Assembly: GCA_002269645.1 (NCBI GenBank)
Contig: NIVC01001150.1
Coordinates: forward strand, 260,422 to 324,421
Reading direction: 5' to 3'
DNA: 64,000 bases
DNA from: Macrostomum lignano
Lineage: Eukaryota
Part shown: positions 33,872 through 52,345 of the stretch, piece after piece
Layout: each line of letters begins with the position of its first letter
How positions within the stretch are numbered: the first letter of the stretch is position 1
Made by a program: the position numbers and the translations under genes
The notes under the pieces: model-generated
Databases searched by the model: none
What the model saw: only the letters and a program-made list of their open reading frames with translations
What the model was told of the DNA's origin: nothing

Positions 33872-34791
33872 GCAGCCGGGGCCAAAGCTTACAGGCTCTG
33901 CGCTTTTAACTGTCCCGAAATTGTGACTCGCACAGACGTGTCCACGTGTCATGTACAAAAATCGAACACTTTGTTGGGCTGGTCGATGAAGCTCTAATGA
34001 AAAATAAATACTTAAAGCTACCGTGTTTTTGTCGATTGACTCTCAGTCCTATGCTGAAGAAGTTGTGTCTAATCCTTGTAAAGAAAATATATATTAGGTT
34101 TGTAGAAAACTCACGAGGCGTTGCCGGCAAAAGTCCCTTGAAAAAAGAAGCTTTAGCTTTTCCCGGGTTTAAATTTTTTGAAAAAGTTGGTCGAATGAAC
34201 CTCGAGATAAGATATAGACGAGCCGTTCAGGCGAACTCCTTTGAGTGCATCCTGATCCGCAACACCGAAAGGTGAGGCATCGAAATGGCCCGGATTCGCC
34301 AGGTTCATAAAACCCTTTCGAAAGTTGTATCAAAGCAGTACGCTTGAGGCGAAGCTCAGGTTCGACACTCCGGACGAATTGGCAGCCGGCACCAACTATT
34401 CAGAGTGCAGTGCAGCACGCACTCGGACTCGACGGCAGCGGTCGCGGGCTCCAGGCCAGACAGAGCACTCGGACAGGTGTTGGTCAGAAGCTCATACACT
34501 GCAGAGCATTGCTCGCATGCTACAGCTGGGTAGCACAAAAACAAAAGCGAAATTACACCAACTAACATTGCAAAATATGCTGCTGTTTTATCAGAACTTG
34601 CTGGGTGGCGCTCCCCTGCGTTATGCGAATATATATATATATATAGTGTCTTTTTGAAGCGCTGCAATCACCAATTACACGCCAGCTCTTTTAGCCAGCA
34701 TTTGTCTCATTAGCGGAACGGCCGGAGGGAGAGAGCAAAGGCAAGGATTGGAGAGCACGAGCAAAACATCCCAAAAACCCGAACAAAGGGA

Positions 34792-35490
34792 TTAAAAAGT
34801 AGGGTACACGGCGACGGGGCGAGTCAGGCGAGCGCTAGGAGGTGCCGACAGCACACGGTTGACCATTGGGCGCAGGAGACGGAGGCAACCTCCCGACTGC
34901 GGCAGGTAGCGTGAAACGGCGCCGCTGCGCCAGCCGCCCAGCCGCTTGATCTGCTCCACGTCGAGGCCGCTGTCGAACGCCAGACAGGCGCCACCCCGTC
35001 GTAGAGAGTGGCCTGAGAAAGCTGTCGCCGCCCAACCCGCATCTGTCAGAGCCCGAGCGAGGCGGCGGTCGAATTGACGCGATGACATCGGGCACCAGCT
35101 TCCGGCGATGTGGACGCAAAACAGCCGAGTGAGCGCCGGCGCAGACCGCAGCTTGTTAGTCTGAAAATGCCGCCGCAGGGCTTGGACAGGGCATAGTGGG
35201 TGGCTTCCGAGCGCTGGCAGCACCGCCTCCTGGTGGTCTTGTCCGCATTGGTTGGTCTTCGACTGTCGAACTCGGAGTCTCCAGCACTGACTATCGGCCT
35301 GAGTGTCGCTGACGAGAATGGAGTGGCGCCCGCAGACATTTGCTTTCCTGAGAAGCGCCCAGAAGCAGCAGAGCACGGCGGCCCAAAAGGCGGCGTCTGC
35401 AGGGTCTCTTGGGTTCACCTGGTTTGCCAGTGAAAGCAGAACAGCCGGGGTGATGGGGTCTTTCTGCTTGCACAGGAGTGTACAGCGGCC
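34792..35490 (-). mobile_element. Tyrosine recombinase fragment of a DIRS/Ngaro-type retrotransposon
   Basis: Open frame DPITPAVLL..DAAFWAAVLCCFWALLRKAN..RQSKTNQ..CPVQAL..FSGHSLRRGGA..GGWRSGAVSRYL carries the R-K-HxxR-W-Y catalytic set. No RT/RNase H is adjacent and the 5' end is truncated. Confidence 0.85.
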
Positions 35491-35981
35491 TTAAATGACG
35501 CTTCTATGATTTTATCATGACGCTGCATTTCAAGTCGAAAGAGCTGCTTGACCTTTGCAAAAAACATGTTTTTCGAATATTTAATCCCTTTAGCATCGAG
35601 AAATTTCTTAGCCACGATGCATGTACCATCACGGAAAAATTTCTAAACGATCAGTGCAAGTTCGAAGAAAATCGATTGAGCCGTTTTTTCTAAAATCGAT
35701 CTCATACCTATCCACCGTACCGACAGACCATGTTTAGTTTAGCTCCTGACCTGACTTGCGCTTGGAATCAAGCCTGGGCCGCTGGCACGCCAGAGCATCG
35801 CGCTATACCATGCACTTGTTTTGAAATGGCCTTTACAAGCCATTGTTTGAAATTCTCTGACATGTAAGCAGAAGATAATTGGAAAACAAAGACTTAAATT
35901 TGCTTTCCTGACCATCAGAATAAAGCCAGTTAGTGTTGCACAATGTCTGTGGGCTATAAAAAGAGTCCTTCAATGAGTTGT

Positions 35982-37136
35982 CTATCCATTCCTATCAAAG
36001 TATTGCAGATTGGCGATCAGAGTGGGCCGACTGCCGTAGACCTCCAGCTCTGCCGGCACATCGCAGGCGGTCATTGGCCGCGAATCTCGCCGTCTAACGC
36101 TGATGCTCACCATGAGCATCCTGGAGCAGCTCACAACGAAGTATTCGCCCTTGTCGATTGGCAAGCAGAAGCCCATGTACCTGACGTTCCCTAATCTGCG
36201 CTCCACGGAGTCGAATGTGTAGTCATTGGGGTCGAAACTGCAGTCATTCCCTTTCCGCTTCCAGACTACGATCTTCTCCACAAACCTTTTTGTCGACAAG
36301 CTGCCAAAGTTGAATTGCAATGAGCTGCCGATGGTCATATTTGAGTTCTCGTCTGGACCGAAGTTGTCCTCACGGATACCGTCAATGGCCTTCATGATGG
36401 TGGGATTGAAGATGCTCCTAGAGCTGTTGCTATCCCTGTCAATCATCGGGTTCATGTAGGAATCGCCCGTGAAGGCAGACAGAACCTCGAAAGCGTCTGC
36501 AAGATGCGTTGAGTTCAGTCAGACGAGTTTTCTATCGAAATTCGAAATAGAAAACAGGTATGAATTTCGTGCTACGACCCCTGGTTTGACTACGTGCGTG
36601 ACCAACATTCATTTGAGGCCTGTGCATGAAAGTTGGCTGGGGATTGACGCATTCACACCCATTAGGGCCAACCCCATCTTATAGGTGATCAGCAATCAGC
36701 GGAATGGAGACAAAATTGCCGCATCGTTGTGGGACGTGGGCTGTTGTCGAAGGCGTGTTGTGCCAGGGAGCCCACAGCACTCCTGTGAACATTACTATCA
36801 TCAATGCCTTATAAAAGAGAAGAGTTCATAGTGTTACGCGAGTACAGTAAACTTCAGCTTCAGCTGTGGAACTTGGTATGAAAAAATCGGACACAATCTG
36901 GATTAGGTCAAAATGCACGGTTAAGGACAGCGCAAGAGCTCCGTCATGTGCTCACCGTAGCAGTCTTTGTTAAGCGGCAGCCTGGCAAAGCCCCGCCCGG
37001 GACAGGGGACGCAGCCATCGCTGCTCACCATCTGGAACTCGGTGCATCCGTGCGTCCTCCGCAGCGACGCGGCGTCCTCTTGGGCAGCAACAGTCGCGAC
37101 TGCGGCCAGCAATGCCAAGCTTGCAGAGAAAATCAT
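35982..37136 (-). CDS. Secreted protein with a possible divergent F-type lectin / discoidin (F5/8C)-like domain
   Basis: Exon 37136-36956 (signal peptide MIFSASLALLAAVATVAAQ, Cys-rich segment, GTGAGC donor, phase 1) joins in phase to exon 36496-35982, giving 231 aa. KAIDGIREDNF, VEKIVVWKR, ERRL and ELEVYG resemble F-lectin-fold motifs. The domain call is tentative. Confidence 0.5.
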
Positions 37137-38332
37137 TGCGTTAAGATTTCAGTGCAGGATTGAGCCCACATGCATTTCAGTTCGGGGTCGCACATTTGAA
37201 GCATTTATTTACCCGCGTCATAAACTTTCATCTGATAATTGGCTGCACGTTGCATGCAAACAACATGCAGCTACGTAGACTTTGGAATTTGAACTGAAGC
37301 GTCTTCTACCCTTAGTTTTAATTATTTATCTTATTCCGTTGCTAATTCTCTACTATCTAGACTTCGGTCATCTCCAAGCTGTTAACCTACCAGGCATGTC
37401 TTCTTCGTATTTTGCACCGAGCTGACCCGAGCAATCGTAAACAAACCGGCCAGAAGGGAGACGCCGAAGCCAAGACAGGCACTTGGGGGCAAAGTTTTCT
37501 GTCAGCCATCGTGTCGTTCGTGGGTTCGTCGGTCTATTTGATGGCGATGTAAACAAGCCTTAAAGTACATCGCCTGAAGCAAATCGGATGAAAGGGGCTG
37601 AGGGAGCTGTTGTTGTTAAACGGGGGTGCCATCGAGTGCGAAATGCCCGTCTGACAGGGTCGAGCGTGAGATCAATTTCGCCACCGGTGAACACTTGATC
37701 CCCCTGCCGTAAGCACGCGAGAGCCTGTCACTCATCTCCATTGCCTAGAATCGCGGTATCTGGTGGGTCACACTGTCAGGGTACCAATAACTTCTGGGGC
37801 TCATGCCTTCCAGGTGATCCATTTACCAGCTCCCTTCGCGGGTAGATTCACCTAGCGCAATGACAGCTCAAAGCAGCACAGAGCGCGGCACTCTTCCTGA
37901 AATACGAGCAGCTCAGCCGCCAAGTTCGTCAGCCAGCCCCGGTCAGACAAAAGTACCCTCCGGGCAGAGTGCACCCAAACACGCAATCGCGAGAGATCGT
38001 CTTTACGTCTCAATTGGCTGAGTTGCGGGGAAAATCTCCCATTTACTGGGGCAATTTACCGGACCACTGCAGACTAGCCATTGCGAATTTTTGGGCTCAT
38101 TATTTATGGGCGAATAGCTAAAGAATCGAGCGCACTACTATAATTCATTGCATTCAGTAGTACGAACACCGACAGCATTAATTCGTAAATAAAAATATTT
38201 GAGAGATTGGAGAAATGGCGAGCACTTATTATAATTTCTTCTTCACCGCAAACTCAGCCTTTCATCTGAATTGCAGTCGCCAGAACAAAACCAAAATGTG
38301 AGCTGCATTCATCCACTCTCCCATCCGTTGGC

Positions 38333-38622
38333 AGTCAGTCAGTTAGCCAGTCAGTCAGTCAGTCAGCCAGTCAGTCAGTCAGTCAGTCAGTCAGCCAGTC
38401 AGTCAGTCAGTCAGTCAGTCAGTCAGTCAGTCAGTCAGTCAGTCAGTCAGTCAGTCAGTCAGTCAGTCAGTCAGCCAGTCAGTCAGTCAGTCAGTCAGCC
38501 AGTCAGTCAGTCAGTCAGCCAGTCAGTCAGTCAGTCAGTCAGTCAGTCAGTCAGTCAGTCAGTCAGCCAGTCAGTCAGTCAGTCAGCCAGTCAGTCAGTC
38601 AGTCAGTCAGTCAGCCTGTCAG
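38333..38622. repeat. (CAGT)n microsatellite
   Basis: About 70 units with occasional CAGC variants. Confidence 0.98.
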
Positions 38623-39074
38623 TCGCTCGGCCACCGGCTGGTGCCGCCAATTCAAGCAGATTTAAATAAAAATTGCAGTTCCCGTGCGCGCGCCATAAAG
38701 CAAAATCATTGGTGATTTTGCCCCGGACAAAAAAGCCCCGGACAAAGGAGACGATGCAAAAGCGAAAAAGTTGGGCTGACTGGCTGCAGGAGGATTCGGG
38801 GTACTTAAAAAGCTCTTCAGCTTAATCGAATGACTAATGGTAAAATGCAAGAGCGATCACTGACTGGCTCTGTGTCTCAAAAATTCCGGTGCAGTGCCAT
38901 CTCAAATGTGGGCTATAATTAAAGTAAAAAATCGCAAGCTTCATCATCCCCTCTCATCAGTTTCTCGATCAAGAAGCAAATTTAAAAGCTTTGCGATTCA
39001 ATGAGAAACTGGCAATTCCAGGCTGACAGATCCGCCCACCTGCGGAGTGACGCGCTGACAACTTCAACAGTTGG

Positions 39075-39260
39075 ATGCTGGCTGTGTCAGCCGTGTCAGC
39101 TGTGTCAGCAGGACTAGAGGAAACTGTCAGCAGGGATGCTGGCTGTGTCAAACGTGTCAGCTGTGTCAGCAGGACTAGAGGAAACTGTCAGCAGGGATAC
39201 TGGCTGTGTCAGCAGGACTAGAGGAAACTGTCAGCAGGGATGCTGGCTGTGTCAGCAGGA
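39075..39260. repeat. About 44-bp tandem repeat (CTGGCTGTGTCAGCAGGACTAGAGGAAACTGTCAGCAGGGATR)
   Basis: About 4 imperfect copies. Confidence 0.85.
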
Positions 39261-40375
39261 CTATAGGGAACAATTTAGCGCTGCACTGTCTCGCAAAAGC
39301 AATTTGACAATTTGCAAATGTTTTGCGGACTCCAACCAACTCGTCCGTCATACAGTCTGCCCCATTATAAAAAGCAACTGGGCCCTAAAAATAGGCCGCC
39401 TGACAGCTCCACACGAGCTGTGACAAAAGCAAATTGGCAAGTCTGCTGCCACTAAAAGCAATCTCTCCTAGAGAAAAGTCCAAGCCAATTATCGCACCTG
39501 TGTAATGCCTCGCGCCAGTCTCAGACAGAAATGGCGTCTCCAGACTCATCAGTCATAAAAAACTGTTGCTGCCTGCAGGAGGGACACCGTAAAGAACGCA
39601 GCTTTTTAATCGCCGAGGGGCATCAGCGCCGAGTGCGACTCTAATGGTGGTCTGTGGGGCGAGTCGCAGCCCGTGTGATTGACAGCCCCGCTAATGCCTT
39701 CCTGGGCCCGGCCGGGTCTTGAGAGCGGCAGCGATGATGCCGTGCAGCATCAGTCAGTTTCTGATGGTGTAAAAACAGCCCCGATGCCGGCTCTGCTTGC
39801 TGAGAGCAAACAGCCTCAGTGTCTCCCCCGCAGCAGCATTGTTGCCATTCGGTGAGCACAGGCAGCCTCTTGCTGGCGCGCCGAACCACTTTGCTCAGGT
39901 GGGCAGCTCAGGCAGTCCCGTGTTTGCCAAGGCCTGGTCAGGTGCGGGTGACTGCTGCTGTTTCTTGGAAGTCTACCTAATCGCTTTGTGATCGATTGCC
40001 TATTTTTAAAACAATAAAAAATCCGAACGATGAAGGATTGAGGGAAGCTGAGACCTGCCTAAGCTGGGGGGGGGTAAGTGATGAGGCTCAATAATTCTGC
40101 AGCGGCGCGGGATGGCTGGCTTCAGCAGCAGGAAATCTATCTTCGGTCATTTGATGACGGACTGGAGGCCGCAGCTCAGACGAAGCTGGGACATTTTTGG
40201 ATCTGCCTACGGCTTCTTTGGGAATAAAGAATCTCAAAGAGCCTCTGAAATAGCCGAAGAACTCCGCGGCACTGCAGCGGAGGCTCCCGTGTCAATCATA
40301 ATTAGCTCCACTTCGGCTCACAGGGACTCACTAGGGGCCTTGCAACCTAATCGCGTCGCTTGCGCCCCCGTCAGT

Positions 40376-40438
<63 letters not shown>
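40376..40438. repeat. (TAAG)n microsatellite
   Basis: Perfect array directly visible. Confidence 0.97.
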
Positions 40439-40439
<1 letters not shown>

Positions 40440-40540
40440 GGCACACTGTACTTTCAAGAAATAGGAAAAGGAAAATCAGGACTAGCAAAATCATTGCTGG
40501 GAGAATTAAATTATATTGGCCTAAAGGAGTTACGAGCGTA

Positions 40541-41325
40541 TGTGTCTGCAGCTGACATGGCCGGAGATTGCAGGTGTCTGCAGCTGACATGGCCGGAGAT
40601 TGCATGTGTCTGCAGCTGACATGGCCGGAGATTCCAGGTGTCTGCAGCTGACAAGGCCGGAGATTGCATGTGTCTGCAGCTGACATGGCCAGAGATTCCA
40701 GGTGTCTGCAGCTGACATGGCCGGAGATTGCATGTGTCTGCAGCTGACATGGCCGGAGATTGCATGTGTCTGCAGCTGACATGGCCGGAGATTGCAGGTG
40801 TCTGCAGCTGACATGGCCGGAGATTGCAGGTGTCTGCAGCTGACATGGCCGGAGATTGCAGGTGTCTGCAGCTGACAAGGCCGGAGATTGCATGTGTCTG
40901 CAGCTGACATGGCCGGAGATTGCAGGTGTCTGCAGCTGACATGGCCGGAGATTGCAGGTGTCTGCAGCTGACATGGCCGGAGATTGCAGGTGTCTGCAGC
41001 TGACATGGCCGGAGATTGCAGGTGTCTGCAGCTGACATGGCCGGAGATTGCATGTGTCTGCAGCTGACATGGCCGGAGATTGCAGGTGTCTGCAGCTGAC
41101 ATGGCCGGAGATTGCATGTGTCTGCAGCTGACATGGCCGGAGATTGCAGGTGTCTGCAGCTGACATGGCCGGAGATTGCAGGTGTCTGCAGCTGACATGG
41201 CCGGAGATTGCAGGTGTCTGCAGCTGACATGGCCGGAGATTGCATGTGTCTGCAGCTGACATGGCCGGAGATTGCAGGTGTCTGCAGCTGACATGGCCGG
41301 AGATTGGGCTGTCCGCAGCTGACAT
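40541..41325. repeat. 30-bp minisatellite (TGTCTGCAGCTGACATGGCCGGAGATTGCA-based)
   Basis: About 26 near-identical units. Source of the SAADTCNLRPCQ ORFs. Confidence 0.97.
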
Positions 41326-41895
41326 GCAGCTAATGTTTTTCAAAGTGACAATGTAAAAACTATTGCAATTGATCTCGCCAATCCAAACTAGACTGAGTGA
41401 TGGCAAATAGCATTCAATTCTTTTGCATCTCAACGCAAGGACGGCTTACTTACAAATAAAATGCATTCTTAAGCCCATAATAAAGTGTTTTAGCCGTCAG
41501 CGGTTTACAATGCTGCCCAAATTCAGGATAAAACACGAGTGATCGACAATATTGCAAGTACTCTGTGCATAGCTGCTCAGACTCACAAGTCTTATCTCGG
41601 GTAAGAGAATTTCGGGGTGGGCGCACCGCGCATTCAAGTGACGCGAACGGGCCAAGATTCGTCCAATGCACATTAATTGTACGCTGCCACAAATGCAGTA
41701 CGTACTCTCGTACACTCCAGCACGTTGCTATGGGAACACAAGAGAGACCATAGCGGGAGGAATTGTGCATTCGAAGGTAAAAATGATTCCCACGCTGGCT
41801 TGCCAGGGTTTAACTGAAAGCAATTAAAAACAGAAGCAGGCCTTTTAAATCTTTCTCAGGCCATCTCTGAGTCCGCCCAATTCAGCACCGCAACA

Positions 41896-44226
41896 ATGGA
41901 CAGCGCGAGCAAGCAAGAGGATGGCAGCGCCAAGCAGCGGCTGCCCAGCGCGAGCAAGCAAGAGGATGGCAGCGCCAAGCAACGGCTGCCCAGCGCGAGC
42001 AAGCGAGAGGATGGCAGCGCCAAGCAACGGCTGCCCAGCGCGAGCAAGCAAGAGGATGGCAGCGCCAAGCAACGGCTGCCCAGCGCGAGCAAGCAAGAGA
42101 ATGGCAGCGCCAAGCAACGGCTGCCCAGCGCGAGCAAGCAAGAGGATGGCAGCGCCAAGCAACGGCTGCCCAGCGCGAGCAAGCAAGAGGATGGCAGCGC
42201 CAAGCAACGGCTGCCCAGCGCGAGCAAGCAAGAGGATGGCAGCGCCAAGCAACGGCTGCCCAGCGCGAGCAAGCAAGAAGATGGTAGCGCCAAGCAGCGG
42301 CTGGCAGTGCTGGTGTGCGGACACTCCGCCAGTCGCCAGTGGCTGAACGCAGCATCTGAAAAGTTGCAGGCGGTCAGCGACAGACGTATCGAATGCCGTG
42401 AGGCCACAGAGGTGGCGCCTCGCAGCCTTCGCGCCCGCGCCCGCCTCGTACAGGCGAGCGGAGCGGCGCTGGTGCTGGCTGAGGCGCGACTACAGCGGAG
42501 TCCAATTCTAATGGAGCTGATCAACTTCATCCATGCCAGCGGCTTGCCAATCGCGGTGCTGCTGATGCAGAGCTTCTACGAGCCTAGTGGCGCCCTGGCC
42601 GCCATCGGCACCGCGCATGACTGCATCCTCAGTGGCGCCGGAGATCCAGCCTCCGACTGGGCCAGCCGGGCGGCCTCGCACCTGATGTCCCGCGCTAAGC
42701 CGGTGCGAGCCGCCGCGGCCGCTGGCGCAACTGACGACGCAGACGAGAAGCAGCTGGTTGGAGTGGAGGCGGCCAGCAAGGCGGGTGGGTCGGGGGTTTT
42801 CCTCTCCTACCAGCCAGACGGGGAAAAGGCGGTTGCACTGGTCCAGACCAGTCTTAGCACCGCCGTGCGCTGCAGACCGGACCGCCGAAACCGGGAGGCC
42901 ATCGAAGCGTGCCGTGTGTTCGTTGCCATAATGTCTCCCGGGTACGAGGCCAGTGCCGACTCGCTGCACGATCTTGACTTCGCCCGCCTGCGCCGCAAAG
43001 AGGTGGTGCCGGTGAACGCCGTGCCGAAGGCGCAGAAGTGGCGACCCTCCGGCTGGCTGGCGCTGGCAGTGGCCGGCCGGCTGTACCACCGACTGTCGGA
43101 CGAGGCGTCGGCGGCGGAGCAGCACTACGACTCCACACCGCTGAAAGACTTCGTTGCCGCTGTTCAAGCTGGCCTACAGGACAGACCGACTGAGGAGGAA
43201 GCCGAGGCGGCCGAAGTTCGGGCCCTGACCGCTGAGGCGGAGGCCTGCAAGAAGGAGCTGCTTGACTTGGGAGGCACTTGGCCGCCCGCTGAAAAGTCAA
43301 CAGCGATGGAGCTTAGTCAGGCTTTTAAGCACTTGACGGTGGAGGAGAGCCAACCAAAGACGCAGGCCAACCTTCCCTACAACCTGATCCAATATAGCGT
43401 AACTCGAATGTCGCTGGAGCCGCCGAAGCCGCTGTTTGACGCCAGAGGCGTGCCGATCGTCCGCAGCTTTGACGCGATGCTGTCCTACCAGTGGGCATCG
43501 CAGGACTTGGTGCGGACGTTTCGCGAGCAGCTCAGCGTGTACAATGTGGACGCCTGGATGGACATCTGGGGCGGCATGCAGGGAAATGTCAACGACAGCA
43601 TGGCTAGGGCGGTGGAGAGCTCCAGGATGATCGTCTGCTTCTTCACTGCTAAGTACCAGCAGTCAGCCAACTGTCTGCTGGAGCTGAAGTACGCGGTGCG
43701 TAGAGACCGGCCGCTTCTCTTCCTGCTGGTGGAGCCATCGACCCGGCCGCTGGACTGGGTGTCCGAGCTCATGGCCAAATCAGTTGTGATTCCCTTCACT
43801 GGGATGAGCGACGCTCCCAAGCTTGAAGACGGAATTCCCCGGTTGGTCCGCGTCATCGAGACGGTCAAGAAGGTCTCGGCTCATGAAGCGCTGCGACCGC
43901 GCAGGCGAGAAGACGTCAGCGAGGAGGTCTACCGGCTTGAGAGGCAGATCAGCGCCGCCAAGGACGCCGTCCACGAGCTGAAGGGCACTCAGCGGTTCAG
44001 CACCTGCAGTCGCTGCTCGGTGAAATACGACCCGACATCGGTGGGTTCCGATTCCTGTGCCAAGCACTCGGCCTACTACATCGGGGGCAACATCATGGCT
44101 GGGCGGTGGGTCTGCTGCAGCCAGACGGACACGAAGGCGCCGGGCTGCAGCAAGGCGCCGCACATCAGCGAGCCCCGACAGTGGGCCACCATCACCGGCG
44201 GCGCCAAGAAGTGGCTTCCCGAGTAG
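41896..44226 (+). CDS. Multi-TIR-domain protein: 15-aa N-terminal repeats, three TIR_2-like domains, coiled coil, C-terminal Cys/His zinc cluster
   Basis: Uninterrupted 776-aa ORF. The third domain is a clear TIR_2 (FDAMLSYQWASQ..AWMDIWGGMQGNVNDSMARAVESSRMIVCFFTAKYQQSANCLLELKYA). The second reads VFLSYQ..EAIEACRVFVAIMSPGYEASADSLHDLDFA..WRPSGWLALAVAGRLY. The first is degenerate. The tail is CSRC..CAKH..RWVCC..APGC..H. Confidence 0.85.
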   Translation: MDSASKQEDGSAKQRLPSASKQEDGSAKQRLPSASKREDGSAKQRLPSASKQEDGSAKQRLPSASKQENGSAKQRLPSASKQEDGSAKQRLPSASKQEDGSAKQRLPSASKQEDGSAKQRLPSASKQEDGSAKQRLAVLVCGHSASRQWLNAASEKLQAVSDRRIECREATEVAPRSLRARARLVQASGAALVLAEARLQRSPILMELINFIHASGLPIAVLLMQSFYEPSGALAAIGTAHDCILSGAGDPASDWASRAASHLMSRAKPVRAAAAAGATDDADEKQLVGVEAASKAGGSGVFLSYQPDGEKAVALVQTSLSTAVRCRPDRRNREAIEACRVFVAIMSPGYEASADSLHDLDFARLRRKEVVPVNAVPKAQKWRPSGWLALAVAGRLYHRLSDEASAAEQHYDSTPLKDFVAAVQAGLQDRPTEEEAEAAEVRALTAEAEACKKELLDLGGTWPPAEKSTAMELSQAFKHLTVEESQPKTQANLPYNLIQYSVTRMSLEPPKPLFDARGVPIVRSFDAMLSYQWASQDLVRTFREQLSVYNVDAWMDIWGGMQGNVNDSMARAVESSRMIVCFFTAKYQQSANCLLELKYAVRRDRPLLFLLVEPSTRPLDWVSELMAKSVVIPFTGMSDAPKLEDGIPRLVRVIETVKKVSAHEALRPRRREDVSEEVYRLERQISAAKDAVHELKGTQRFSTCSRCSVKYDPTSVGSDSCAKHSAYYIGGNIMAGRWVCCSQTDTKAPGCSKAPHISEPRQWATITGGAKKWLPE
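41900..42300 (+). repeat. In-frame coding 45-bp minisatellite, (SASKQEDGSAKQRLP) x9
   Basis: Tandem 45-bp units start immediately after the ATG at 41896. Confidence 0.95.
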
Positions 44227-46129
44227 CAACTGGCCGTCACAGTTGCTCTCTCCACTGAGTCAGGTCACCCCTCTGCATGTCTAGTTTTAGAAGCTGCTCA
44301 ACACCTGCTGGGATCATGCAGTTTTGCACTGGGCAGTTAACTTTGAACAAATTAGGAGTAATATTTTTGCACTGACTCTGTTGAGTTGCATGCTATCTTC
44401 AAAACTGAAATTTACGTTTTCGATATCCAACAAAAAGACTTAAACAAAGATTTTTTTAATATAAAAGAAGGCTTATTAAAAACCTTACTATGCGTTTCAA
44501 TTGTTGAAAACAGTCTAATCACAGTGTCACGTTATTGGCGTAGCGGCCAGCTATGCGGTGACCCTTAAAAGGGCCGTTTCAGTCCCAAAATAAGTTGAAG
44601 TCAATTCTTGTAAAGCGGATTTTGTAGCGGAGCACTTGGCGATAAAGGCAGGAACTGCCGTAGTTGTCTTTATTATCAATATAAATAGTAAGTTTGGTTG
44701 TTACTGGCAAATAACAAACTTTGGTTTCCTGGGCACTGGCGGCTGCAACAATGGTTTCTTTCAAGATAAATTGGATGTGAGTTCAAGCGACAGACGAGTG
44801 ATGTAATGGCGACGTGACGTGAGCAGTGGCTATGAGCACAGTGAAGGCAGTGAAACGTAGTGGCGAGTTTGGCGTCGGTCGTGGCGTGAGACAGTCAAGT
44901 GTGTGAGCAGGCTGGCCCAGACAGAAGGGCCGTGGTGAGAAATAAGGAGGCTCGAGGCAGCCAGACAAACAGATAAGACAGCTAAGAGGCAGCAGGGAAG
45001 GAAACAAGGAACAAGCGGAGTGCCGCCGCCAGGCGGGGGGGGTTAATAAAAGAGCGCAGAGGGGGGTAGCGCGAGCACGAGTGATTTCATTGGCTGGCGA
45101 GAGAACTTAAAATTATCGATCGTGCCAATTTTATACGGTCGCGAGAGAGGATAGCAAAATATACAGTGAATTAGAAATTGCCACAAAATCGTTGGGCACT
45201 ACTACAAGTAAACGTCGCAATAAACGAATGGAAAAGTTTAGTTGAAACGGTGAAACTGAAGGGTTGAAACTATAGAGAAACAGCAGTCCAACGGCCCTTT
45301 TCGGGACCACCTTAAACTGACAACGTCACACACAGGATGTCTTTTTACACCTTTTTGCGTTCTATTTCGATAAAACTGCATTCAAGTTCGGCAAACTGGC
45401 TTTCATTTTCGGCATCAGCTATGGCCGCAAATCCAAACTGCATTCGAATTCGACAAACCTAGAAACAATTTAGGCAAACTGCATTCAATTTCAGCATTGT
45501 ATATTCAATTTCGACAGCCACCGCCTCAGACACAGACTGTCTATGGAAATAAGCGCATCTTAACCCAAAACTGATTTTCAATTTCGGCAAACTGCACTCA
45601 ATTTCGACACGGAAAATATCGATCGAAGAGAGAGGTTAAAGAGAGGCATTTGGAGTACAGTGTAAACCGCAATAGCTGAAGAAACAATTAAACGCGAAGA
45701 AACAAAGCACATAGGAAGAAACGATTGCACACCGAGGAAATAATATCGAGGAAATATCGAAGAAATAACCTCGTGAATTAAATAGCTCGTATAAGTCATG
45801 CAATATTTAAACCTCAAAGAATCGGTGATCCGTGTTGTAATACCGGCTAAAATGCGTGCCTCGCCCATAGATCTTATATAAGATCTATATAAGATTTTTG
45901 CCTCGCCATCTACATGTATAGATTTGCGTCAGTGAGCAAGGACACCATCTGATCTTCCAGTAAAAACGGACATCCACGGCAATCGATGTCGGTAGGTGCG
46001 TCCTGCTTCAAGCTGCTGCACGGCTTCGCCATTGCCTTCCTCATTATTCCGCCTGCATGGGCTTACTGGTGTTGAGACTCTGGGTAATCCCTGCAAACAC
46101 GGCGTCACGTACTGCACAACAGCAGGTGT

Positions 46130-46425
46130 TGCTGCACACAGGGTGTCACTGCTGCATGACTAAGGCTGTCACTGCACAGGATGTCACTGCATGACAAAGG
46201 GTGTCACTGCATGACAAAGGGTGTCACTGCACAGGGTGTCCCTGCATGACAAAGGGTGTTACTGCACAGGATGTCACTGCATGACAAAGGGTGTCACTGC
46301 GTGAAAAAAGGGTGTCACTGCATGAAAAAGGGTGTCACTGCACAGGGTGTCGCTGCACAAGGTGTCACTGCACAGGGTGTCACTGCATGACAAAGGGTGT
46401 CACTGCACAGGGTGTCACTGCACAC
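46130..46425. repeat. Composite minisatellite (GGGTGTCACTGCACA / GGGTGTCACTGCATGACAAA)
   Basis: Variant tandem units directly visible. Confidence 0.9.
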
Positions 46426-46579
46426 AGCACCAAGCCACGCCGCTAAAGTTGGCTTCACTAAAGATGGCGCGCGCCAGCGAAAAAGTGACAACACACTGAC
46501 GTGTCACTATTTTTTCACAAATCGATCGAGAACATCCTATAGCTATATACTAAAAATATTTCCAGTGACATTGACATTA

Positions 46580-46740
46580 ACTCTGTGATCAGAGTGGGTG
46601 AGCTAGCAGGCGGGCAGCTGTCTCTGTGATCAGAGTGGGTGAGCTGGCATGGTGGATAGCTGTCCCTGTGATCAGAGTGCATGGGTGAGCTGGCATGGTG
46701 GATAGCTGTCCCTGTGATCAGAGTGGGTGAGCTGGCAGGA
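46580..46740. repeat. About 42-bp tandem repeat (TGTCCCTGTGATCAGAGTGGGTGAGCTGGCATGGTGGATAGC)
   Basis: About 4 imperfect copies. Confidence 0.85.
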
Positions 46741-47638
46741 CTATTCAATCCTTTAAAAGCCGCGCTTTAATATCTACCTTCATTCAGTCTTGAAATGAGC
46801 ATATGCAAGCACAAGCTGTAAGAAATACTCATAAATTAAGGATTAATGAGAAAATTCAATTCTAAATATTTTGCTTGGATGATATTGATCGATATATTAA
46901 AACGAAATGATTCGGGATACACACAAATTTAAACATGGCAGCAAAGAAAGGAGAAGAGAACCAAAAAAGTAAATTACTCATTTACAAATTTATTATTGTC
47001 TTCCAAGTTTCCTTTGCAAATGGATTAATATTTCGGTTTCATATGAGAAACCAAAGCGATCTCGAGAGACCAAGCAAAGCAAGTCGCACTGTGCATTTCC
47101 AGAGGTGGACATGTTTGACCACCCCAGATTTTCACCATAACCAATACATCACATTTGTCTGGAGAATCTGTCGACAGGTTGTTGAGAAACCATCGTTTTT
47201 TCTGATTTTCATTCTTTTTTATGCATTTTCTTTAACAGTATGCAATGAACATAAATATTTTGAATACCTTAAATTTTCCTTGGCAGTCATTCTCAAATTT
47301 GTCTAAATTTCCATTTTTTTAACTTTAACCGTCCGCGCCTTTCCTCGGATCGTTCTTTTTGTTATTTTCTGTCGACTTTCTTGCTTTTAAAATCTACAAA
47401 GGCATTAATTTCCGTCACCTAGTAGAGAATTGGTAAAACAAAATTAAATAGGCATCTGCTTTCAAACCTCAGCACTAGATGCTTATCGCGTATCATTTAC
47501 AGATTCTATGTAAAGTGCAAACGAGCGCAAAACTATACAAATTTCCCTAAAAGAATCAGGCTTTTAAGTAGAAAAATGTGCAGTTAAAATCAAAATCTGA
47601 GTTAGTAGTCAGGTAGTCACGCAGTGAGCCTGCCCAGC

Positions 47639-50600
47639 TCAGTCCATGTTCACCAGCATTATGGCGCTGATGGGGCTGCGGCAGAGCGGGCACGTGTCCA
47701 GGTTTTTGGCACACCTGGAGCAGCAGCACAGATGATTGCAGTTTAACAATGTCACATTGATGATGCTGTCCATGCACACTTTGCAGGCTCTCCAGTCCAG
47801 CTCCTCATCGCCCAGCGGCTTGGGCTCCCGGTTGCTGATCAGAGACTGGTCCCGCTGGGCCCGCTCGAAAAACTCGCGGCCGCTGAGTCCCTGCGAGTGG
47901 CGCTGCCTGAGCTGCGTCAGGGTGCTCTCCAGGAACAGCTCGCTGCTCTGAAAGTCGTCGCCGGCGGTCTTCAGCTGGAGGAACTGCGCAGTCTTGGCGT
48001 CATCGGGGTCGCAGCCCAGCTGCAGGAGGCCCAGCGCGGGCGGGAAGTCCTCGCGGGCCTTGAAGAAGCGCGGCTCGATGCGGTAGTCGACCAGAGAGGC
48101 GGTGGCGGACGGTGCCGACGGGTCCGCCGCGATTGGCGCCGTCTCGCTCGCGGCCGGCAGCGGCTGCAGCGGGTAGGGCGGGTGGCGGGCACGGCTGTAC
48201 AGCACGAAGGCGTGCCCGCGCTCCAGCAGCAGGTGGCAGCAGCGCGGCGACCACCGGGCGTGCTCAACCCAGGGATCGTCCTCCCCAGCCAAGTGCAGGA
48301 CGCGCAGGCCGCACCAGTGGCAGGCGGTGGCGCCCAGCGGCTGGCCAGCCAGCGGGAAGAAGCCCGCATCGGCCAGCTGGTCGGCCGGCACCGGGCGAAC
48401 GGAGCCGGACAGGCGGGCGAGCGCCTCCTGACGGCAGCGGCGGTCCCGCCAGGCGGGGTGGCACATGGGATGGTAGGTGGCGGCCTTACCACTGCCGGCA
48501 GCGATCTGCAGGCTGCGGGCCAGCAGTTCCAGATTTCCAGCAGCAGTCGGACTGCAGGCAGCAGCGGCTGTGGCTGAGGACACCGGCGGGCGCGGCCGCC
48601 TGCTGAGTTGGGCCTCGCGCTCCAGCTCCGAGTCGGCCTGCTGGAGTGGCGCAGCAATGGCGGACAGATTCTCAGCGGCAATGGCGGCAGTGCTGGCAGG
48701 CTGGCTGTCAAATTCGGCAGTGGCAGCCACAGGGACCACCTCGGCCTCGGTGCACTGGGTGGACAGCCTGACTTTGGCATCCTCGGGCTTCTGGATTGGC
48801 ACATTGCCAACATCCAGGCTGAGCAGCATGGGGCAGGTGGCAAATCGCAGGCGGTGGGCTTCAGCCACATCCTCATTTGGGTCCCAGTTGAACAGAGTGC
48901 CGAGGCAGAAAGCACATTTCACCCGATCCGATTCCTACATTGGATTAAGATTGTTAATGATGTGAATATAGCTAAATATAGTGAGCAATTAGTTCTATGA
49001 AAAGATAGGCTTATTTGATACCATCTTTTTCCTTTGCAATAATTTATATCTAATTGACTCTGATCTATTAATTTTAATGATATTATGCATTAAATTTGCT
49101 TTATCTGCATTAGCTCTTTATGCAATATCAGCCATGAGCTACACAAACAATAAGCACAATGTAGCAGACTATAAATTAGACTTTTCAAGGGTTGGGGCAA
49201 ATATGGTAGTTAAGCATTAGCCTAGTTATGGTAAATGGCATAGTAGTTAAGTATAAGCCAAGTTATTGCAAGAAAGCATTTATTGGGCTTATGCTCAACT
49301 ACTATGCTATCTGCCCTAACTTCTGGAAAGTTGGTTCATATTCTAATAAATATTGATATATATATAAGAAATTTTAATCTAGGCTAAACTAGAGGAATAG
49401 ACTGGTTGGTATATATATATATATGTATATATATATTAATATATTATATATACATATATTAAATTAATAATTATTAAGTATTTATATATAATTAATATAT
49501 AATAATTAATATATATTAAATGGAAATACTATACTTATATTATGCATAAATAAATAGGAATGTATGTTGGGCCCTACTAATGAATAGTAAGAAATATTCA
49601 AACATTTATTGAGATATTCTAAGACTTATTAAAAAATAAATCTTTAGAATTTAGATTTAATTTGGTAATTTTTAGTTAAGAAGAGCCTTAACTTTGGTTT
49701 AGTAACAATAATACTATAGGATTAACTAAAGATCTTTACCATAATTTTTAATATCAGTAATATAAGTAATAATAAATAAAAGAGTTCTAAAAACAATTGT
49801 TACTAAATAATATAACTTTTTATTTAGGCCTAAGTATTAAAAAGACATTGCTATATATTAATATTATTATCAAGTCATAATATCTATAGTAAAGTCATAG
49901 CTAAAAAAATATTAGTTATAATATTGTAAAATTCTTATTATTTTAGGTTTATTTCTTATGATATGGGTTATATAAAAGATGTAACAAACTATATAACTAT
50001 AACTAAGTCTATTATTAGTCAACTATACATATTTACAATAGATGATCTATTTATAACATTCAATATTTACCTGTAAGTAGAAAAAACCATTTGCTGCCAG
50101 TGTCTCTGGTTTTTGACCAGTCTTGAATTTAACTTGCTTGCCACTTAGGTTGAATGAAGATAAACGATTTACTTCATATTTCATATTTGATTTTTCTATA
50201 GGAATACCAGCAGGTAGGTGGCTCATGTCAAATGGTCGATCTTTGAAATTCAAAATTTGTGGCTCACATTGGACTGATGTAGACCTTCTAGGAGAAATCT
50301 GCTTGTAATGCTTTAGTTGAATACAAAGCTTATAAGCACTTACATAGCCTTTACTCACAACACTTTCTTGCAACTTCAGTAGTTTTTTATCACAATAGAA
50401 TTTATAACCTCTGCTTAAAGCTGCTATGATACAGTCAAGAATTCCTATTGATTTGATAAGATCATCATCATTAGGTCTAGAAGAAGCCACAGACACGCTG
50501 ATTTTACTTCTGGATAAGTAGTCCATTAACCGCTGTATTTCTGCGATATAAAATAGTAGGCAAATACATTTGTCAGAGCAGATAACTGTTTCAGGCGAGG

Positions 50601-50946
50601 ATAGTTGGTGACATCGATCCTTTCCTACAAACTTTCGTTGTATCGATTGACAATTACCAGGTACTCGGCGTATGGGATCAGCTTCATTTGCAGCACGTCT
50701 TTCCAGAACTCTTGGATGCGCCCGTTTGCCATGTTTTTCGACAGAGTTTGAGGCACTTTTATTATTTCCACATAATTGACGCTGCTCAAGACTCAAATCT
50801 TGCTTGCGTTGCACTTGTGGTTGTGGAGACTTGTAATCATGATCGCTAAAATCGCTTGGTGCTGCTTTAATCCAACCTTGTATTCTTCCATCATGACAGG
50901 CACCATGATTGGCATTATCGAATTGTAATGGAGCTCCGCTAGCCAT
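47639..50946 (-). CDS. Inhibitor of apoptosis (IAP/BIRC family): BIR-BIR-UBA-like-RING; 5' end uncertain
   Basis: Exon 50946-50071 ends YEVNRLSSF..PETLAANGFFYLQ|gt and splices in phase 0 to exon 48934-47639 (ESDRVKCAFCLGTLFNWDPNEDVAEAHRLRFATCP), completing a BIR. Second BIR: LADAGFFP..CHWCG..DDPWVEHARWSPRC. RING: CKVCMD..CNHLCCCSRCAKNLDTCPLCR. Confidence 0.9.
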
Positions 50947-52345
50947 TGATTCCTTGATTGACGATGGCCTTTTAATCCGTTTCTTTCCGAATCGTTTGAT
51001 TTGTCCATGGAATTGCCGCGGAATATGGAACTAAACATTGCTATCTACGAAAATGCAGGGCATTCCATGGCAGTCCCACGGCAAGCCCGCATATATTTAT
51101 TGCTGTACAGCGTACTACGATAAAACAAAAGCAAGAAATTTATTGATACACTGTGCAAGTAAAATAAACGAGTTTGATATAAAACCAGTATAACGTACAC
51201 TACACTAAAAACCGAACTTACAGTCATTCGAATAGATACTGGCGTACGATTATGTACTCGAGTAGGAAGGGCTGACATTGTGGATATGTTATATTGTGTA
51301 CAGGCGAGGATTACGTACAGGAAAATTGGAGGGAGCAACCCTGCTGTACTAGCCGTTCCAAAAGTGTTACAGTAGGTCAGAAATCGTCAAAACGAGGCGA
51401 AAATATGTATTACAACTTTTTTCGGCCCCCAGCCGGATTAAGTAAGTGGTATACACTTGTACATGCGTAGAGTTTGGGCTGTATTAATTAGCGTACTTGA
51501 TGATGATGCAAATTGCAATGATAGAGCTTATCAGCGTTCAAAACGCTGATATGCTATTACAAACTTATCATAGATATTTAATGTTAGACCCACCCATTTG
51601 CCTGCACTAAAACAGCCACGCAGACCATGCGTGCCCTCTCCGTGTGTTAATTCATCTAACTAGCTAACTATGCAAAAAAGCGAATAAGATTGGGTGGGGC
51701 GGAAAAATATCACGCCACCACCCCAACGCTGCCCCCGAGCACAATGTCGAGCATTATAAATACAATGCAATTGAAAAAGCCGAGGCTAGCTCTCCACTGC
51801 CGAGTTTAGTAAAGTTTGAGCTCAAACCTAAGAAAAGGACTTGTCTCAGTTCTTCGAAGCTTCTGTCTGTCGTGGCAGAGGGGTAGCAGGCGTGTAAGGT
51901 AGTTGGCGTGAGAGGCCTTTCAGAGACTACCGATAAACGTGTGGACACAATCAGCATCCTTCATGTTAACTAGTTAAGTTTCAACTTGTTTACTATCGTT
52001 TTAGCTAGCTAAGAACAGATAGCTAAAAACTTCAGAAACTGTACAAAACATATACATTTTCACTCAAACAAGTCATCATCTTTCTCTCCACATCTTCTTA
52101 CATTGGCGAAAGGCGTGCGTACGACTATAGTCAGTCAGTATTTTGTCAGTCAGTAGTCTCGCTGCACCTTTTAATCAACAGCAAGATTTCGATAGCAACT
52201 TGTTCAATTTTCTTTACTTTCCTAAAGTTTTATTTATAAGCCTACACCAGCCTACTCAAACCTACACCAGCCTATGCTCATAAATCATGCATCTACCAGC
52301 TGTAGATTCCTAGAGAGCATGGGATCTTACTATTCTTTTAGTAAT

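What the first reader, a model, noticed from the sequence alone, without database searches (positions are those of the whole stretch)
41896..44226. Triple-TIR protein with a graded catalytic site and a C-terminal zinc cluster: candidate unusual innate-immune NADase or sensor
Seen in sequence: one uninterrupted 776-aa ORF with three tandem TIR_2-like units. The first two end in related motifs (YEPSGAL; WRPSGWL..GRLY) and the third ends RPLDWV. Only the third keeps the glutamate at the alpha-C position (SANCLLELKYA); the second has Asp (SLHDLDFA) and the first is degenerate. A short coiled coil and a CxxC..CxxH..CC..C..H cluster (Btk-motif/REXO1/CHORD-like) follow. There is no LRR, TM, SAM, death or NACHT domain. 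Established: this Glu is catalytic in SARM1, plant and bacterial (Thoeris) TIR NADases, which activate by TIR oligomerisation. Inference: one active TIR pre-assembled with two pseudo-TIRs in a single chain could be a self-scaffolded or auto-inhibited NAD+ hydrolase or signal synthase, an architecture I do not recognise from characterised proteins.
Basis: partly seen in the sequence, partly recalled or inferred. Interest (0 to 1): 0.72.

Follow-up and report, generated by a model that had tools for sequence, protein, structure and literature searches.

The report
Flatworm triple-TIR protein with zinc module
This is a real flatworm gene from an uncharacterised protein family that was catalogued in 2016 and is found in animals, a chytrid fungus, oomycetes and a cryptophyte alga; it has three TIR-type domains and a zinc-binding tail, and only the third TIR looks able to break down the metabolite NAD+.

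Summary
The 776-aa ORF is real. The window is Macrostomum lignano contig NIVC01001150.1, gene BOX15_Mlig033212g1.

All three units are TIR-derived:
- Unit 3 is a clear Pfam TIR_2 domain.
- Unit 2 is weak by itself, but its orthologues score above the Pfam threshold.
- Unit 1 has no Pfam hit. It is supported by orthologue hits, profile-profile matches and a confident fold model whose best match is the BCAP cryptic TIR.

The C-terminus is a two-zinc module with eight invariant Cys/His ligands. It contains a BTK motif and has CHORD-like ligand spacing.

The architecture is not new. It is "Novel Gene 2" of van der Burg et al. 2016. Full-length relatives occur in Nematostella, Hydra, an annelid, a nemertean, a chytrid, oomycetes and Guillardia. 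No member has been tested.

Only unit 3 keeps the canonical catalytic Glu (29 of 30 homologues). It is 37% identical to a coelacanth TIR that depleted NAD+ in a 2026 preprint. The "graded" catalytic site is not a family trait:
- The unit-2 Asp sits in a variable column.
- The unit-1 Glu is one helical position out of register.

Best reading: an NAD+-consuming TIR enzyme with two built-in pseudo-TIR partners. The cis-scaffold or auto-inhibition idea remains untested.

The parts
41896..44226 (+). Complete ORF, 776 aa plus stop. This is gene BOX15_Mlig033212g1 of Macrostomum lignano.
   Evidence: Homologues align end to end at 37-39% identity over 99-100% of the query.
41901..42303 (+). 45-bp x 9 tandem repeat encoding nine copies of SASKQEDGSAKQRLP (residues 3-137). 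It is a low-complexity N-terminal extension.
   Evidence: Tandem Repeats Finder: period 45, 9.0 copies, 97% matches; units listed. The deposited 671-aa model keeps only 2 copies.
42295..42699 (+). Unit 1 (residues 134-268): a cryptic, divergent TIR-type domain. Glu207 (codon 42514-42516) lies one helical position before the canonical catalytic register.
   Evidence: No Pfam hit for this sequence. 10 of 27 orthologous segments hit TIR_2, best E 1.5e-9. hhalign to unit 2: 97%. AF2 model pLDDT 90.6 with a five-strand/five-helix alternating topology. Best Foldseek match is the 5for 'Cryptic TIR'.
42793..43185 (+). Unit 2 (residues 300-430): a TIR_2-type pseudo-enzyme domain. Asp359 (codon 42970-42972) is at the canonical position. 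The invariant GWLALA.AG.LY motif is at 386-397.
   Evidence: TIR_2 at E 7.3e-5, 23.7 bits. Orthologues reach 36-37 bits, above the cut-off of 28. hhalign to unit 3: 95%. Column statistics.
43192..43266 (+). Long acidic helix between units 2 and 3 (residues 433-457), followed by a conserved WPP motif.
   Evidence: AF2 helix at P0001 328-352. Conserved in alignments A1 and A2.
43396..43470 (+). Conserved motif before unit 3 (residues 501-525; family consensus IHY.VTR..F.PP..LFD..GVP).
   Evidence: Mean pairwise identity 0.36 across 30 homologues. Invariant or near-invariant Asp, Arg, Gly and Pro.
43471..43896 (+). Unit 3 (residues 526-667): canonical TIR_2 domain with the putative catalytic Glu596 (codon 43681-43683) in the motif S.NC.LE.
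   Evidence: Pfam TIR_2 at E 3.4e-20 and TIR at 2.4e-5. Glu in 29 of 30 homologues. Aligns with the corresponding Glu of flax L6. 37% identity, E 2e-25, to the Latimeria H2ZXV5 TIR, which is reported active.
43921..43995 (+). Predicted long helix (residues 676-700) linking unit 3 to the zinc module.
   Evidence: AF2 helix at P0001 571-595, partly low pLDDT. No coiled-coil test was run.
44002..44223 (+). C-terminal two-zinc module plus tail (residues 703-776). Invariant C704, C707, C721, H724, W738, C740, C741, C751 and H756. BTK motif at 734-753. The ligand spacing is CHORD-like.
   Evidence: Invariant columns. Pfam BTK in 28 of 28 members. Profile vs PDB: ITK Btk motif E 0.0015, CHP-1 CHORD 2yrt E 0.006. 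hhalign vs the 2yrt fragment: 92.6%, E 4.7e-7. It is the most conserved region, identity 0.45.

Best explanation
The gene encodes a cytosolic member of an old eukaryotic protein family, 'NG2', with the layout TIR-TIR-TIR-zinc module.

The third TIR is the working enzyme domain. It keeps the canonical alpha-C glutamate (Glu596). By homology it most likely cleaves NAD+, either depleting it or making ADPR/cADPR-type products.

The two N-terminal TIR-derived domains have lost the canonical glutamate but are still under constraint. TIR enzymes are known to become active only when TIR domains pack against each other. These two domains are therefore inferred to act as built-in TIR partners that either complete or restrain unit 3's assembly.

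The C-terminal two-zinc BTK/CHORD-like module is the most conserved part. It is inferred to be the docking or regulatory site for a partner.

Shown here: domain identities, conservation, family membership and distribution. Inferred: catalysis, the role of the pseudo-TIRs and the role of the zinc module.
For: - Unit 3 is a clear TIR_2 domain. Its Glu is kept in 29 of 30 full-length homologues, within a conserved S.NC.LE motif, and aligns with the corresponding Glu of flax L6.
- Unit 3 is 37% identical (E 2e-25) to the Latimeria H2ZXV5 TIR. Table S4 of Hurieva et al. 2026 (bioRxiv 10.64898/2026.04.20.719644) lists that TIR as active with NAD+ depletion, and a Clupea relative as producing cADPR. 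Both have Asn or Ser rather than Trp four residues before the Glu, as unit 3 does.
- Units 1 and 2 are TIR homologues and are far more conserved than the linker between them: identity 0.25 and 0.27 against 0.10.
- The zinc module has 8 invariant ligands and is the most conserved region.
- The whole architecture is conserved from animals to oomycetes and a cryptophyte.
- Established knowledge behind the pseudo-TIR inference: TIR NADase active sites form at TIR-TIR interfaces on oligomerisation (SARM1, AbTir, plant TNL resistosomes).
Against: - No member of this family has been assayed. In Hurieva's tables the family's TIRs (A7ST59_1, L1JXD3_2) are marked untested.
- Table S4 has no 'Active' entry for several isolated TIRs of the same broad subfamily: Didymodactylos, Rhizoclosmatium, and TPR-TIRs of amphioxus, gar and Phallusia. 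A conserved Glu therefore does not guarantee activity.
- The full-length AF2 model gives no confident inter-domain packing (pTM 0.43), so nothing supports a cis TIR-TIR interface.
- The Foldseek hits for unit 1 mix TIRs with other flavodoxin-like folds at similar scores.
Confidence: 0.5

Rival explanations
1. It is a non-enzymatic adaptor. All three TIR domains serve only as protein-protein interaction surfaces, as in MyD88, TIRAP or BCAP. They would bridge an upstream receptor to a partner bound by the zinc module. In many lineages the protein would be membrane-tethered through N-myristoylation.
For: - The best structural match of unit 1 is the BCAP 'cryptic TIR', an adaptor domain.
- 10 of 30 homologues start with MGxxxS/T, as myristoylated signalling adaptors do.
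- Table S4 has no 'Active' entry for several related isolated TIRs that carry the Glu.
- Two of the three units lack a canonical catalytic residue.
Against: - The unit-3 Glu and its surrounding S.NC.LE motif are kept in 29 of 30 homologues across eukaryotic supergroups. That is hard to explain for a pure scaffold.
- The nearest tested relatives, at 37% identity, consume NAD+ or make cADPR.
Confidence: 0.3
2. The zinc module is a true CHORD-type domain that recruits HSP90, as in RAR1, CHP-1 and melusin. The protein would then mainly be a chaperone-linked client or co-chaperone, with the TIRs stabilised or released by HSP90.
For: - The ligand pattern is C-x2-C...C-x2-H...CC...C-x4-H with a conserved Trp before the CC pair.
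- Profile match to the CHP-1 CHORD 2yrt at E 0.006, spanning the ligands. hhalign 92.6%, E 4.7e-7.
- Hurieva's domain table annotates 'CHORD' after the TIR in two chytrid proteins.
Against: - The Pfam CHORD model hit none of 28 members at E <= 1, whereas the BTK motif hit all 28.
- The first Cys pair has different spacing from the CHORD fragment.
- HSP90 binding cannot be inferred from ligand spacing alone.
Confidence: 0.12
3. The ORF is an annotation artefact or a decaying pseudogene, and the apparent units are chance similarity.
For: The deposited model differs from the ORF by 315 nt in the repeat array. Unit 1 has no direct Pfam hit.
Against: - The 2331-nt frame is intact and lies in a local G+C peak.
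- It aligns end to end with homologues from several phyla at 37-39% identity, with invariant Cys/His ligands.
- The inter-unit profile E-values range from 2.5e-11 to 3.9e-6.
Confidence: 0.02

Closest known systems
'Novel Gene 2' (NG2) of van der Burg et al. 2016 (PMC5094078): TIR_2 x1-2 plus BTK motif; A7ST59_NEMVE, H3H1G6_PHYRM, L1JXD3_GUITH
   Same: Same family. The P. ramorum, G. theta and N. vectensis proteins are full-length homologues of the window protein with the same order of domains.
   Different: [quoted passage not shown] The N-terminal cryptic TIR, the eight-ligand two-zinc CHORD-like reading, and the members in Spiralia, Hydra and a chytrid were worked out here and are not in that description. 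The M. lignano member has a 9 x 15-aa repeat in place of the myristoylation-type N-terminus.
Single-TIR proteins of fish tested by Hurieva et al. 2026 (Latimeria H2ZXV5, Clupea A0A6P8EVF3)
   Same: Unit 3 shares the SYQW...GN(I/V)N...S.(N/S)C..E..YA...W motifs and 37% identity. The GWLG...AG.L(Y/W) motif of those TIRs also recurs in unit 2.
   Different: Those are short one-TIR proteins of 236-296 aa. They have no pseudo-TIRs and no zinc module.
SARM1
   Same: A multi-domain, cytosolic TIR protein whose C-terminal TIR carries a catalytic Glu and is held in check by other domains of the same chain. The SARM1 TIR is among the structural matches.
   Different: The window protein has no ARM or SAM domains. 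Any regulatory parts here would be TIR-derived. Octamerisation through SAM domains has no counterpart.
BCAP (PIK3AP1) cryptic TIR domain, PDB 5for
   Same: It is the best structural match to unit 1: E 4.6e-4, TM 0.58/0.61. Both are TIR folds that ordinary sequence models miss.
   Different: There is no detectable sequence relationship (16% identity in the structural alignment). BCAP has one TIR followed by other domains.
CHORD domains (CHP-1/CHORDC1, RAR1, melusin) and the Btk motif of Tec kinases
   Same: Two-zinc Cys/His pattern, with the H...CC-x9-C part matching the Btk motif.
   Different: No Pfam CHORD hit. There is a single copy rather than tandem CHORDs, no CS domain, and no PH domain next to the Btk motif.
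Other tandem-TIR proteins: mollusc Tolls with two TIRs (PMC4929906), cotton dual-TIR protein (PMC10170703), Dictyostelium TirE (bioRxiv 10.64898/2026.04.30.722052)
   Same: More than one TIR in one chain, some of them too diverged for Pfam models.
   Different: They have different partner domains (LRR-TM, RCC1) and show no evidence of common descent with this family.

Membership tests
TIR domain (Pfam TIR_2, PF13676): unit 3 | Sequence match above the curated cut-off | tested here: met
   73.2 bits against a cut-off of 28, E 3.4e-20, residues 528-618. Also PF01582 at 24.6 bits against 21.3.
TIR domain (Pfam TIR_2): unit 2 | Sequence match above the curated cut-off, or homology to a member | tested here: met
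   The window sequence scores 23.7 bits, below the cut-off of 28. Orthologous segments reach 36.4 and 37.3 bits. hhalign to unit 3 gives 95%, E 3.5e-8.
TIR domain: unit 1 | Sequence or structural match to TIR | tested here: met
   Met by transitive evidence only. The window sequence has no Pfam hit, and a profile search against PDB found nothing significant. However, 10 of 27 orthologous segments hit TIR_2, best E 1.5e-9, and hhalign to unit 2 gives 97%, E 2.5e-11. The AF2 model has pLDDT 90.6 with a five-strand/five-helix alternating topology. The top Foldseek hit is the BCAP cryptic TIR, but dehydroquinase and DNPH1 folds score similarly.
Catalytic TIR NADase / cADPR synthase | Glutamate on helix alpha-C at the canonical position | tested here: met
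   Unit 3: Glu596, present in 29 of 30 homologues and aligned with the corresponding Glu of flax L6. Unit 2: Asp359 in a variable column. Unit 1: Glu207, one position out of register.
Catalytic TIR NADase / cADPR synthase | Glu-dependent NAD+ turnover | not testable with these tools
   Evidence is by homology only. A TIR with 37% identity (Latimeria) depletes NAD+, but several related TIRs have no activity recorded.
Catalytic TIR NADase / cADPR synthase | Activation by TIR-TIR assembly (composite active site) | not testable with these tools
   The full-length model has pTM 0.43 and no usable inter-domain geometry.
NG2 family (TIR_2 + BTK motif; van der Burg 2016) | TIR_2 domain(s) upstream of a BTK motif, and full-length homology to H3H1G6, L1JXD3 and A7ST59 | tested here: met
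   Pfam architecture. Full-length hits P0027 (E 1.7e-131) and P0032 (E 3.1e-111), whose 90% clusters contain H3H1G6 and L1JXD3 respectively. Nematostella P0173 at E 2e-207. The IDs were confirmed in the paper's Table S10.
BTK motif (PF00779) | Match above the curated cut-off; H...CC...C zinc ligands | tested here: met
   30.8 bits against a cut-off of 24. 28 of 28 homologues match. H724, C740, C741 and C751 are invariant.
CHORD domain (PF04968) | Match to the CHORD model | tested here: not met
   No member of the 28-sequence alignment hit PF04968 at E <= 1.
CHORD domain (PF04968) | Eight Cys/His ligands with CHORD-like spacing; similarity to a solved CHORD | tested here: inconclusive
   Eight invariant ligands. 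Profile vs 2yrt at E 0.006. hhalign 92.6%, E 4.7e-7, against a single 59-aa fragment.
SARM1 family | ARM repeats and tandem SAM domains N-terminal to the TIR | tested here: not met
   No ARM or SAM hits in Pfam at E <= 1.
MyD88-type adaptors / TLRs | Death domain, or LRR ectodomain plus a TM helix | tested here: not met
   No such Pfam hits. No TM-like segment outside a folded core.

The most novel reading that the evidence does not exclude
The family is a pan-eukaryotic, possibly ancestral, self-contained TIR signalling enzyme. In this reading, two pseudo-TIRs in the same chain supply the partner surfaces that complete or gate the composite active site of the third TIR. A CHORD-type zinc module couples the enzyme to HSP90 or another partner. 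That would make it a single-chain counterpart of the plant pairing of TIR immune receptors with the CHORD protein RAR1.
Probability: 0.15. Interest if true: 0.75.

Novelty: new member of a known kind. Interest (0 to 1): 0.42.

Why it matters
TIR domains are now known to be enzymes in bacteria and plants, and according to a 2026 preprint in many animals. How animal TIR enzymes outside SARM1 are regulated is still open.

This family keeps the same three-TIR plus zinc-module layout in animals, a chytrid, oomycetes and a cryptophyte, so it must do something basic, yet nobody has tested a member. M. lignano is a tractable flatworm with RNAi and transgenesis.

If the pseudo-TIRs gate the active TIR in cis, this would be a simple natural model for how TIR assembly controls catalysis.

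As it stands, this is an ordinary, already catalogued but uncharacterised gene with a clearer domain map than before.

Tried and rejected
- A direct phmmer search of the whole protein against PDB gave only marginal hits with E 0.5-0.9.
- A unit-1 profile search against PDB gave nothing significant. The best hit was spermidine synthase at E 0.38; TLR5 scored 1.2 and RPP1 1.4. Unit 1 therefore rests on orthologue Pfam hits, hhalign and the fold model.
- Foldseek with the full-length model mixed TIR hits with multi-domain alpha/beta enzymes and could not say which unit matched. A unit-1-only model was built instead.
- Literature searches for the locus tag and for M. lignano TIR proteins found nothing on this gene.
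- The 'ecTIR-DC' classification paper (Gerdol et al. 2017) is not in the library, so I could not check whether this family has an ecTIR-DC number.
- I first read the 671-aa public protein as a copy-number variant. That was rejected because the DNA is identical and the model simply omits 315 nt.
- The second word-indexed homologue search added little beyond Nematostella and Nothophytophthora.
- SARM1, MyD88 and TLR membership were considered and rejected for lack of their defining domains.
Full report
**1. What is there**

The window has patchy G+C content, micro- and minisatellites, a retroelement pol ORF and a BIR+RING gene, so it is eukaryotic. Window 33896-52226 is identical to Macrostomum lignano assembly GCA_002269645.1, contig NIVC01001150.1. 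The ORF at 41896-44226 (+) is uninterrupted, 776 aa long, and lies in a local G+C peak of 64%. It is gene BOX15_Mlig033212g1, 'hypothetical protein' / 'TIR domain-containing protein'.

The deposited protein is 671 aa, yet its gene range is the same 2331 nt. The model leaves out 315 nt, which is seven of the nine 45-bp repeat units at 41901-42303. Only one GT dinucleotide lies in the array, at 42284, so no canonical GT-AG intron fits that gap. I infer that the repeat collapsed in the transcript-based model, but this needs cDNA evidence.

It encodes SASKQEDGSAKQRLP x 9, residues 3-137.

**2. The three units**

- **Unit 3.** Pfam finds TIR_2 at 528-618 (E 3.4e-20) and a BTK motif at 734-753.
- **Unit 2.** Scanned alone, it matches TIR_2 at 23.7 bits, below the cut-off of 28. 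Six of ten orthologous unit-2 segments match TIR_2, two of them above the cut-off.
- **Unit 1.** Scanned alone, it matches nothing. Ten of 27 orthologous unit-1 segments match TIR_2, best E 1.5e-9.

Profile-profile comparison of sub-alignments gives unit 1 vs 2 at 97% (E 2.5e-11), unit 2 vs 3 at 95% (E 3.5e-8) and unit 1 vs 3 at 87% (E 3.9e-6).

The full-length AF2 model is mediocre overall (pLDDT 63, pTM 0.43). It does show three alternating five-strand/five-helix units at pLDDT 70-85. Its Foldseek hits include the Hydra TRR-2, MyD88, RPS4, L6, RUN1 and SARM1 TIRs, but cannot be assigned to a particular unit.

A model of unit 1 alone is confident (pLDDT 90.6, pTM 0.87). Its best PDB match is 5for, the 'cryptic TIR' of BCAP (E 4.6e-4). 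RPS4/RRS1, RPP1, TRR-2, L6 and SARM1 TIRs follow, interleaved with other flavodoxin-like folds at similar scores.

Taken together, all three units are TIR-derived. For unit 1 the fold evidence alone would not be enough. That motif is common to this TIR_2 subfamily, including fish and TPR-TIR proteins.

**3. The catalytic position**

I aligned 30 full-length homologues and read the alpha-C columns.

- **Unit 3** has S.NC.LE, with Glu in 29 of 30 and Asp in one. Glu596 is the sixth residue of the modelled alpha-C helix and aligns with the corresponding Glu of flax L6.
That column is variable in the family (L7, E5, I4, H4, D2 and others). A conserved acidic residue (E20, D6) sits two positions later; it is Asp361 here. 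Hurieva et al. list 'HIS' at the catalytic position of L1JXD3_2. This agrees with the His of the Guillardia unit 2 in my alignment, if their '_2' is unit 2, and so would support the register.
- **Unit 1** has Glu207, Glu in 23 of 30 homologues. It is the fifth residue of a helix of the same length, one position before the canonical register.

So one canonical site plus two non-canonical ones holds across the family. A 'graded' Glu-Asp-nothing series does not.

**4. The C-terminus**

C704, C707, C721, H724, W738, C740, C741, C751 and H756 are invariant in 28-30 homologues. That is eight ligands, enough for two zinc ions.

- All 28 members match the Pfam BTK motif. None matches Pfam CHORD at E <= 1.
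- A profile search of PDB finds the ITK Btk motif (E 0.0015) and the CHP-1 CHORD domain 2yrt (E 0.006). The CHORD alignment spans all ligands after the first.
- hhalign against that CHORD fragment gives 92.6%, E 4.7e-7.

I call it a BTK-motif-containing, CHORD-like two-zinc module. CHORD membership is not established.

It is the most conserved region of the protein. Mean pairwise identities are 0.45 for the zinc module, 0.38 for unit 3, 0.27 for unit 2, 0.25 for unit 1 and 0.10 for the unit 1-2 linker.

**5. Relatives and literature**

The first search found full-length homologues at 37-39% identity, including one from the annelid Owenia fusiformis. An exhaustive profile search found 112 cluster representatives at E <= 1e-30. 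About 35-40 of them cover the whole profile.

Named members come from:
- Lineus longissimus, Hydra vulgaris, Lagenidium giganteum, Phytophthora ramorum (H3H1G6) and Guillardia theta (L1JXD3);
- the chytrid Obelidium mucronatum;
- Nematostella vectensis and Nothophytophthora.

No vertebrate full-length member appeared among the labelled hits, but most hits carry no label.

Ten of 30 homologues begin MGxxxS/T, an N-myristoylation-type start. The M. lignano protein instead begins MDSASK followed by the repeat.

Van der Burg et al. [quoted passage not shown] The architecture is therefore catalogued and widespread, but I found no functional study.

Hurieva et al. 2026 (bioRxiv 10.64898/2026.04.20.719644) include A7ST59_1 and L1JXD3_2 in their TIR survey, marked untested.

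Their Table S4 does contain close relatives of unit 3:
- The Latimeria H2ZXV5 TIR is 37% identical to unit 3 over 107 residues (E 2e-25). It is listed as active with NAD+ depletion.
- The Clupea A0A6P8EVF3 TIR is listed as producing cADPR.
- Related TIRs from Didymodactylos, Rhizoclosmatium and several TPR-TIR proteins have no activity recorded.

The active fish TIRs have Asn or Ser four residues before the Glu, like unit 3. The missing Trp of the W...E pattern seen in SARM1, AbTIR and TLR4 (sequences) is therefore no obstacle.

**6. Mechanism**

Shown here: three TIR-derived domains, one canonical Glu, a two-zinc module and deep conservation of the whole layout.

Established knowledge: the alpha-C Glu is essential for TIR NAD+ cleavage. 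TIR active sites form only when TIRs assemble (SARM1, AbTir filaments, plant resistosomes).

Inference: unit 3 cleaves NAD+. Units 1 and 2 are constrained but lack the canonical Glu, and they act as built-in TIR partners that promote or block unit 3's assembly. The zinc module docks a partner or regulator. In many lineages a myristoyl anchor places the protein on a membrane.

I put 0.5 on the enzyme model and 0.3 on a pure adaptor. I put 0.12 on a mainly HSP90/CHORD-driven role and 0.02 on an artefact. The direction of regulation, scaffold versus auto-inhibition, cannot be judged. The full-length model has no reliable inter-domain geometry.

**7. Comparison and verdict**

The protein is a member of the NG2 family. 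Unit 3 belongs to the 'SYQW...NC..E' TIR_2 subfamily, which has tested fish members. It resembles SARM1 in logic: a C-terminal catalytic TIR controlled by other domains of the chain. It is not a SARM1 family member because it has no ARM or SAM domains. It is not a TLR or MyD88-type protein.

What this work adds to the published description:
- the cryptic first TIR;
- the eight-ligand CHORD-like reading of the zinc module;
- the wide phyletic spread;
- the myristoylation-type N-termini;
- the link to experimentally active TIRs.

This is a new member of a known but uncharacterised kind. It is of moderate interest, mainly as a testable candidate.

Noticed in passing
window 41901-42303 (and L001 8001-10331): The public CDS model (671 aa) spans the same 2331 nt as the 776-aa ORF but omits 315 nt, which is 7 of the 9 near-identical 45-bp repeat units. 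Only one GT lies in the array, so no canonical intron fits. The likely cause is a repeat collapse in the transcript-based annotation.
   Followed up: partly
window 47639-50946 (-): A BIR + RING (IAP-like) gene lies about 3.4 kb downstream and converges on the TIR gene. The 427-aa ORF at 47639-48922 is the 3' part of an annotated 678-aa gene. It is a second cell-death/immunity-type gene next door, which may be coincidence.
   Followed up: partly
window 52642-56013 (-): A long ORF of 1123 aa has reverse transcriptase, RNase H and integrase zinc-binding domains. It is the pol of an LTR-retrotransposon-like element. It was not examined further.
   Followed up: no
window 38332-38624, 40376-40439, 40542-41326: Dense satellite DNA lies just upstream of the gene: (CAGT)x73, (AGTA)x16 and a 32-bp x 24.6 minisatellite. 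These generate long spurious ORFs on both strands.
   Followed up: no
window 58651-59811 (+): An ORF of 386 aa has a calcineurin-like metallophosphoesterase domain (E 6e-31).
   Followed up: no
homologues P0004, P0005, P0008, P0021, P0022, P0027, P0030, P0034, P0036, P0037: Ten of 30 full-length homologues, from Owenia, oomycetes and unlabelled sources, start with MGxxxS/T, an N-myristoylation-type signal. The M. lignano protein lacks it.
   Followed up: partly
Hurieva et al. 2026, supplementary table with domain annotations: Two chytrid proteins (Rhizoclosmatium A0A1Y2BZP5 and Chytriomyces A0A507FAF9) are annotated as a single TIR followed by 'CHORD'. They may be one-TIR relatives of this family.
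   Followed up: no
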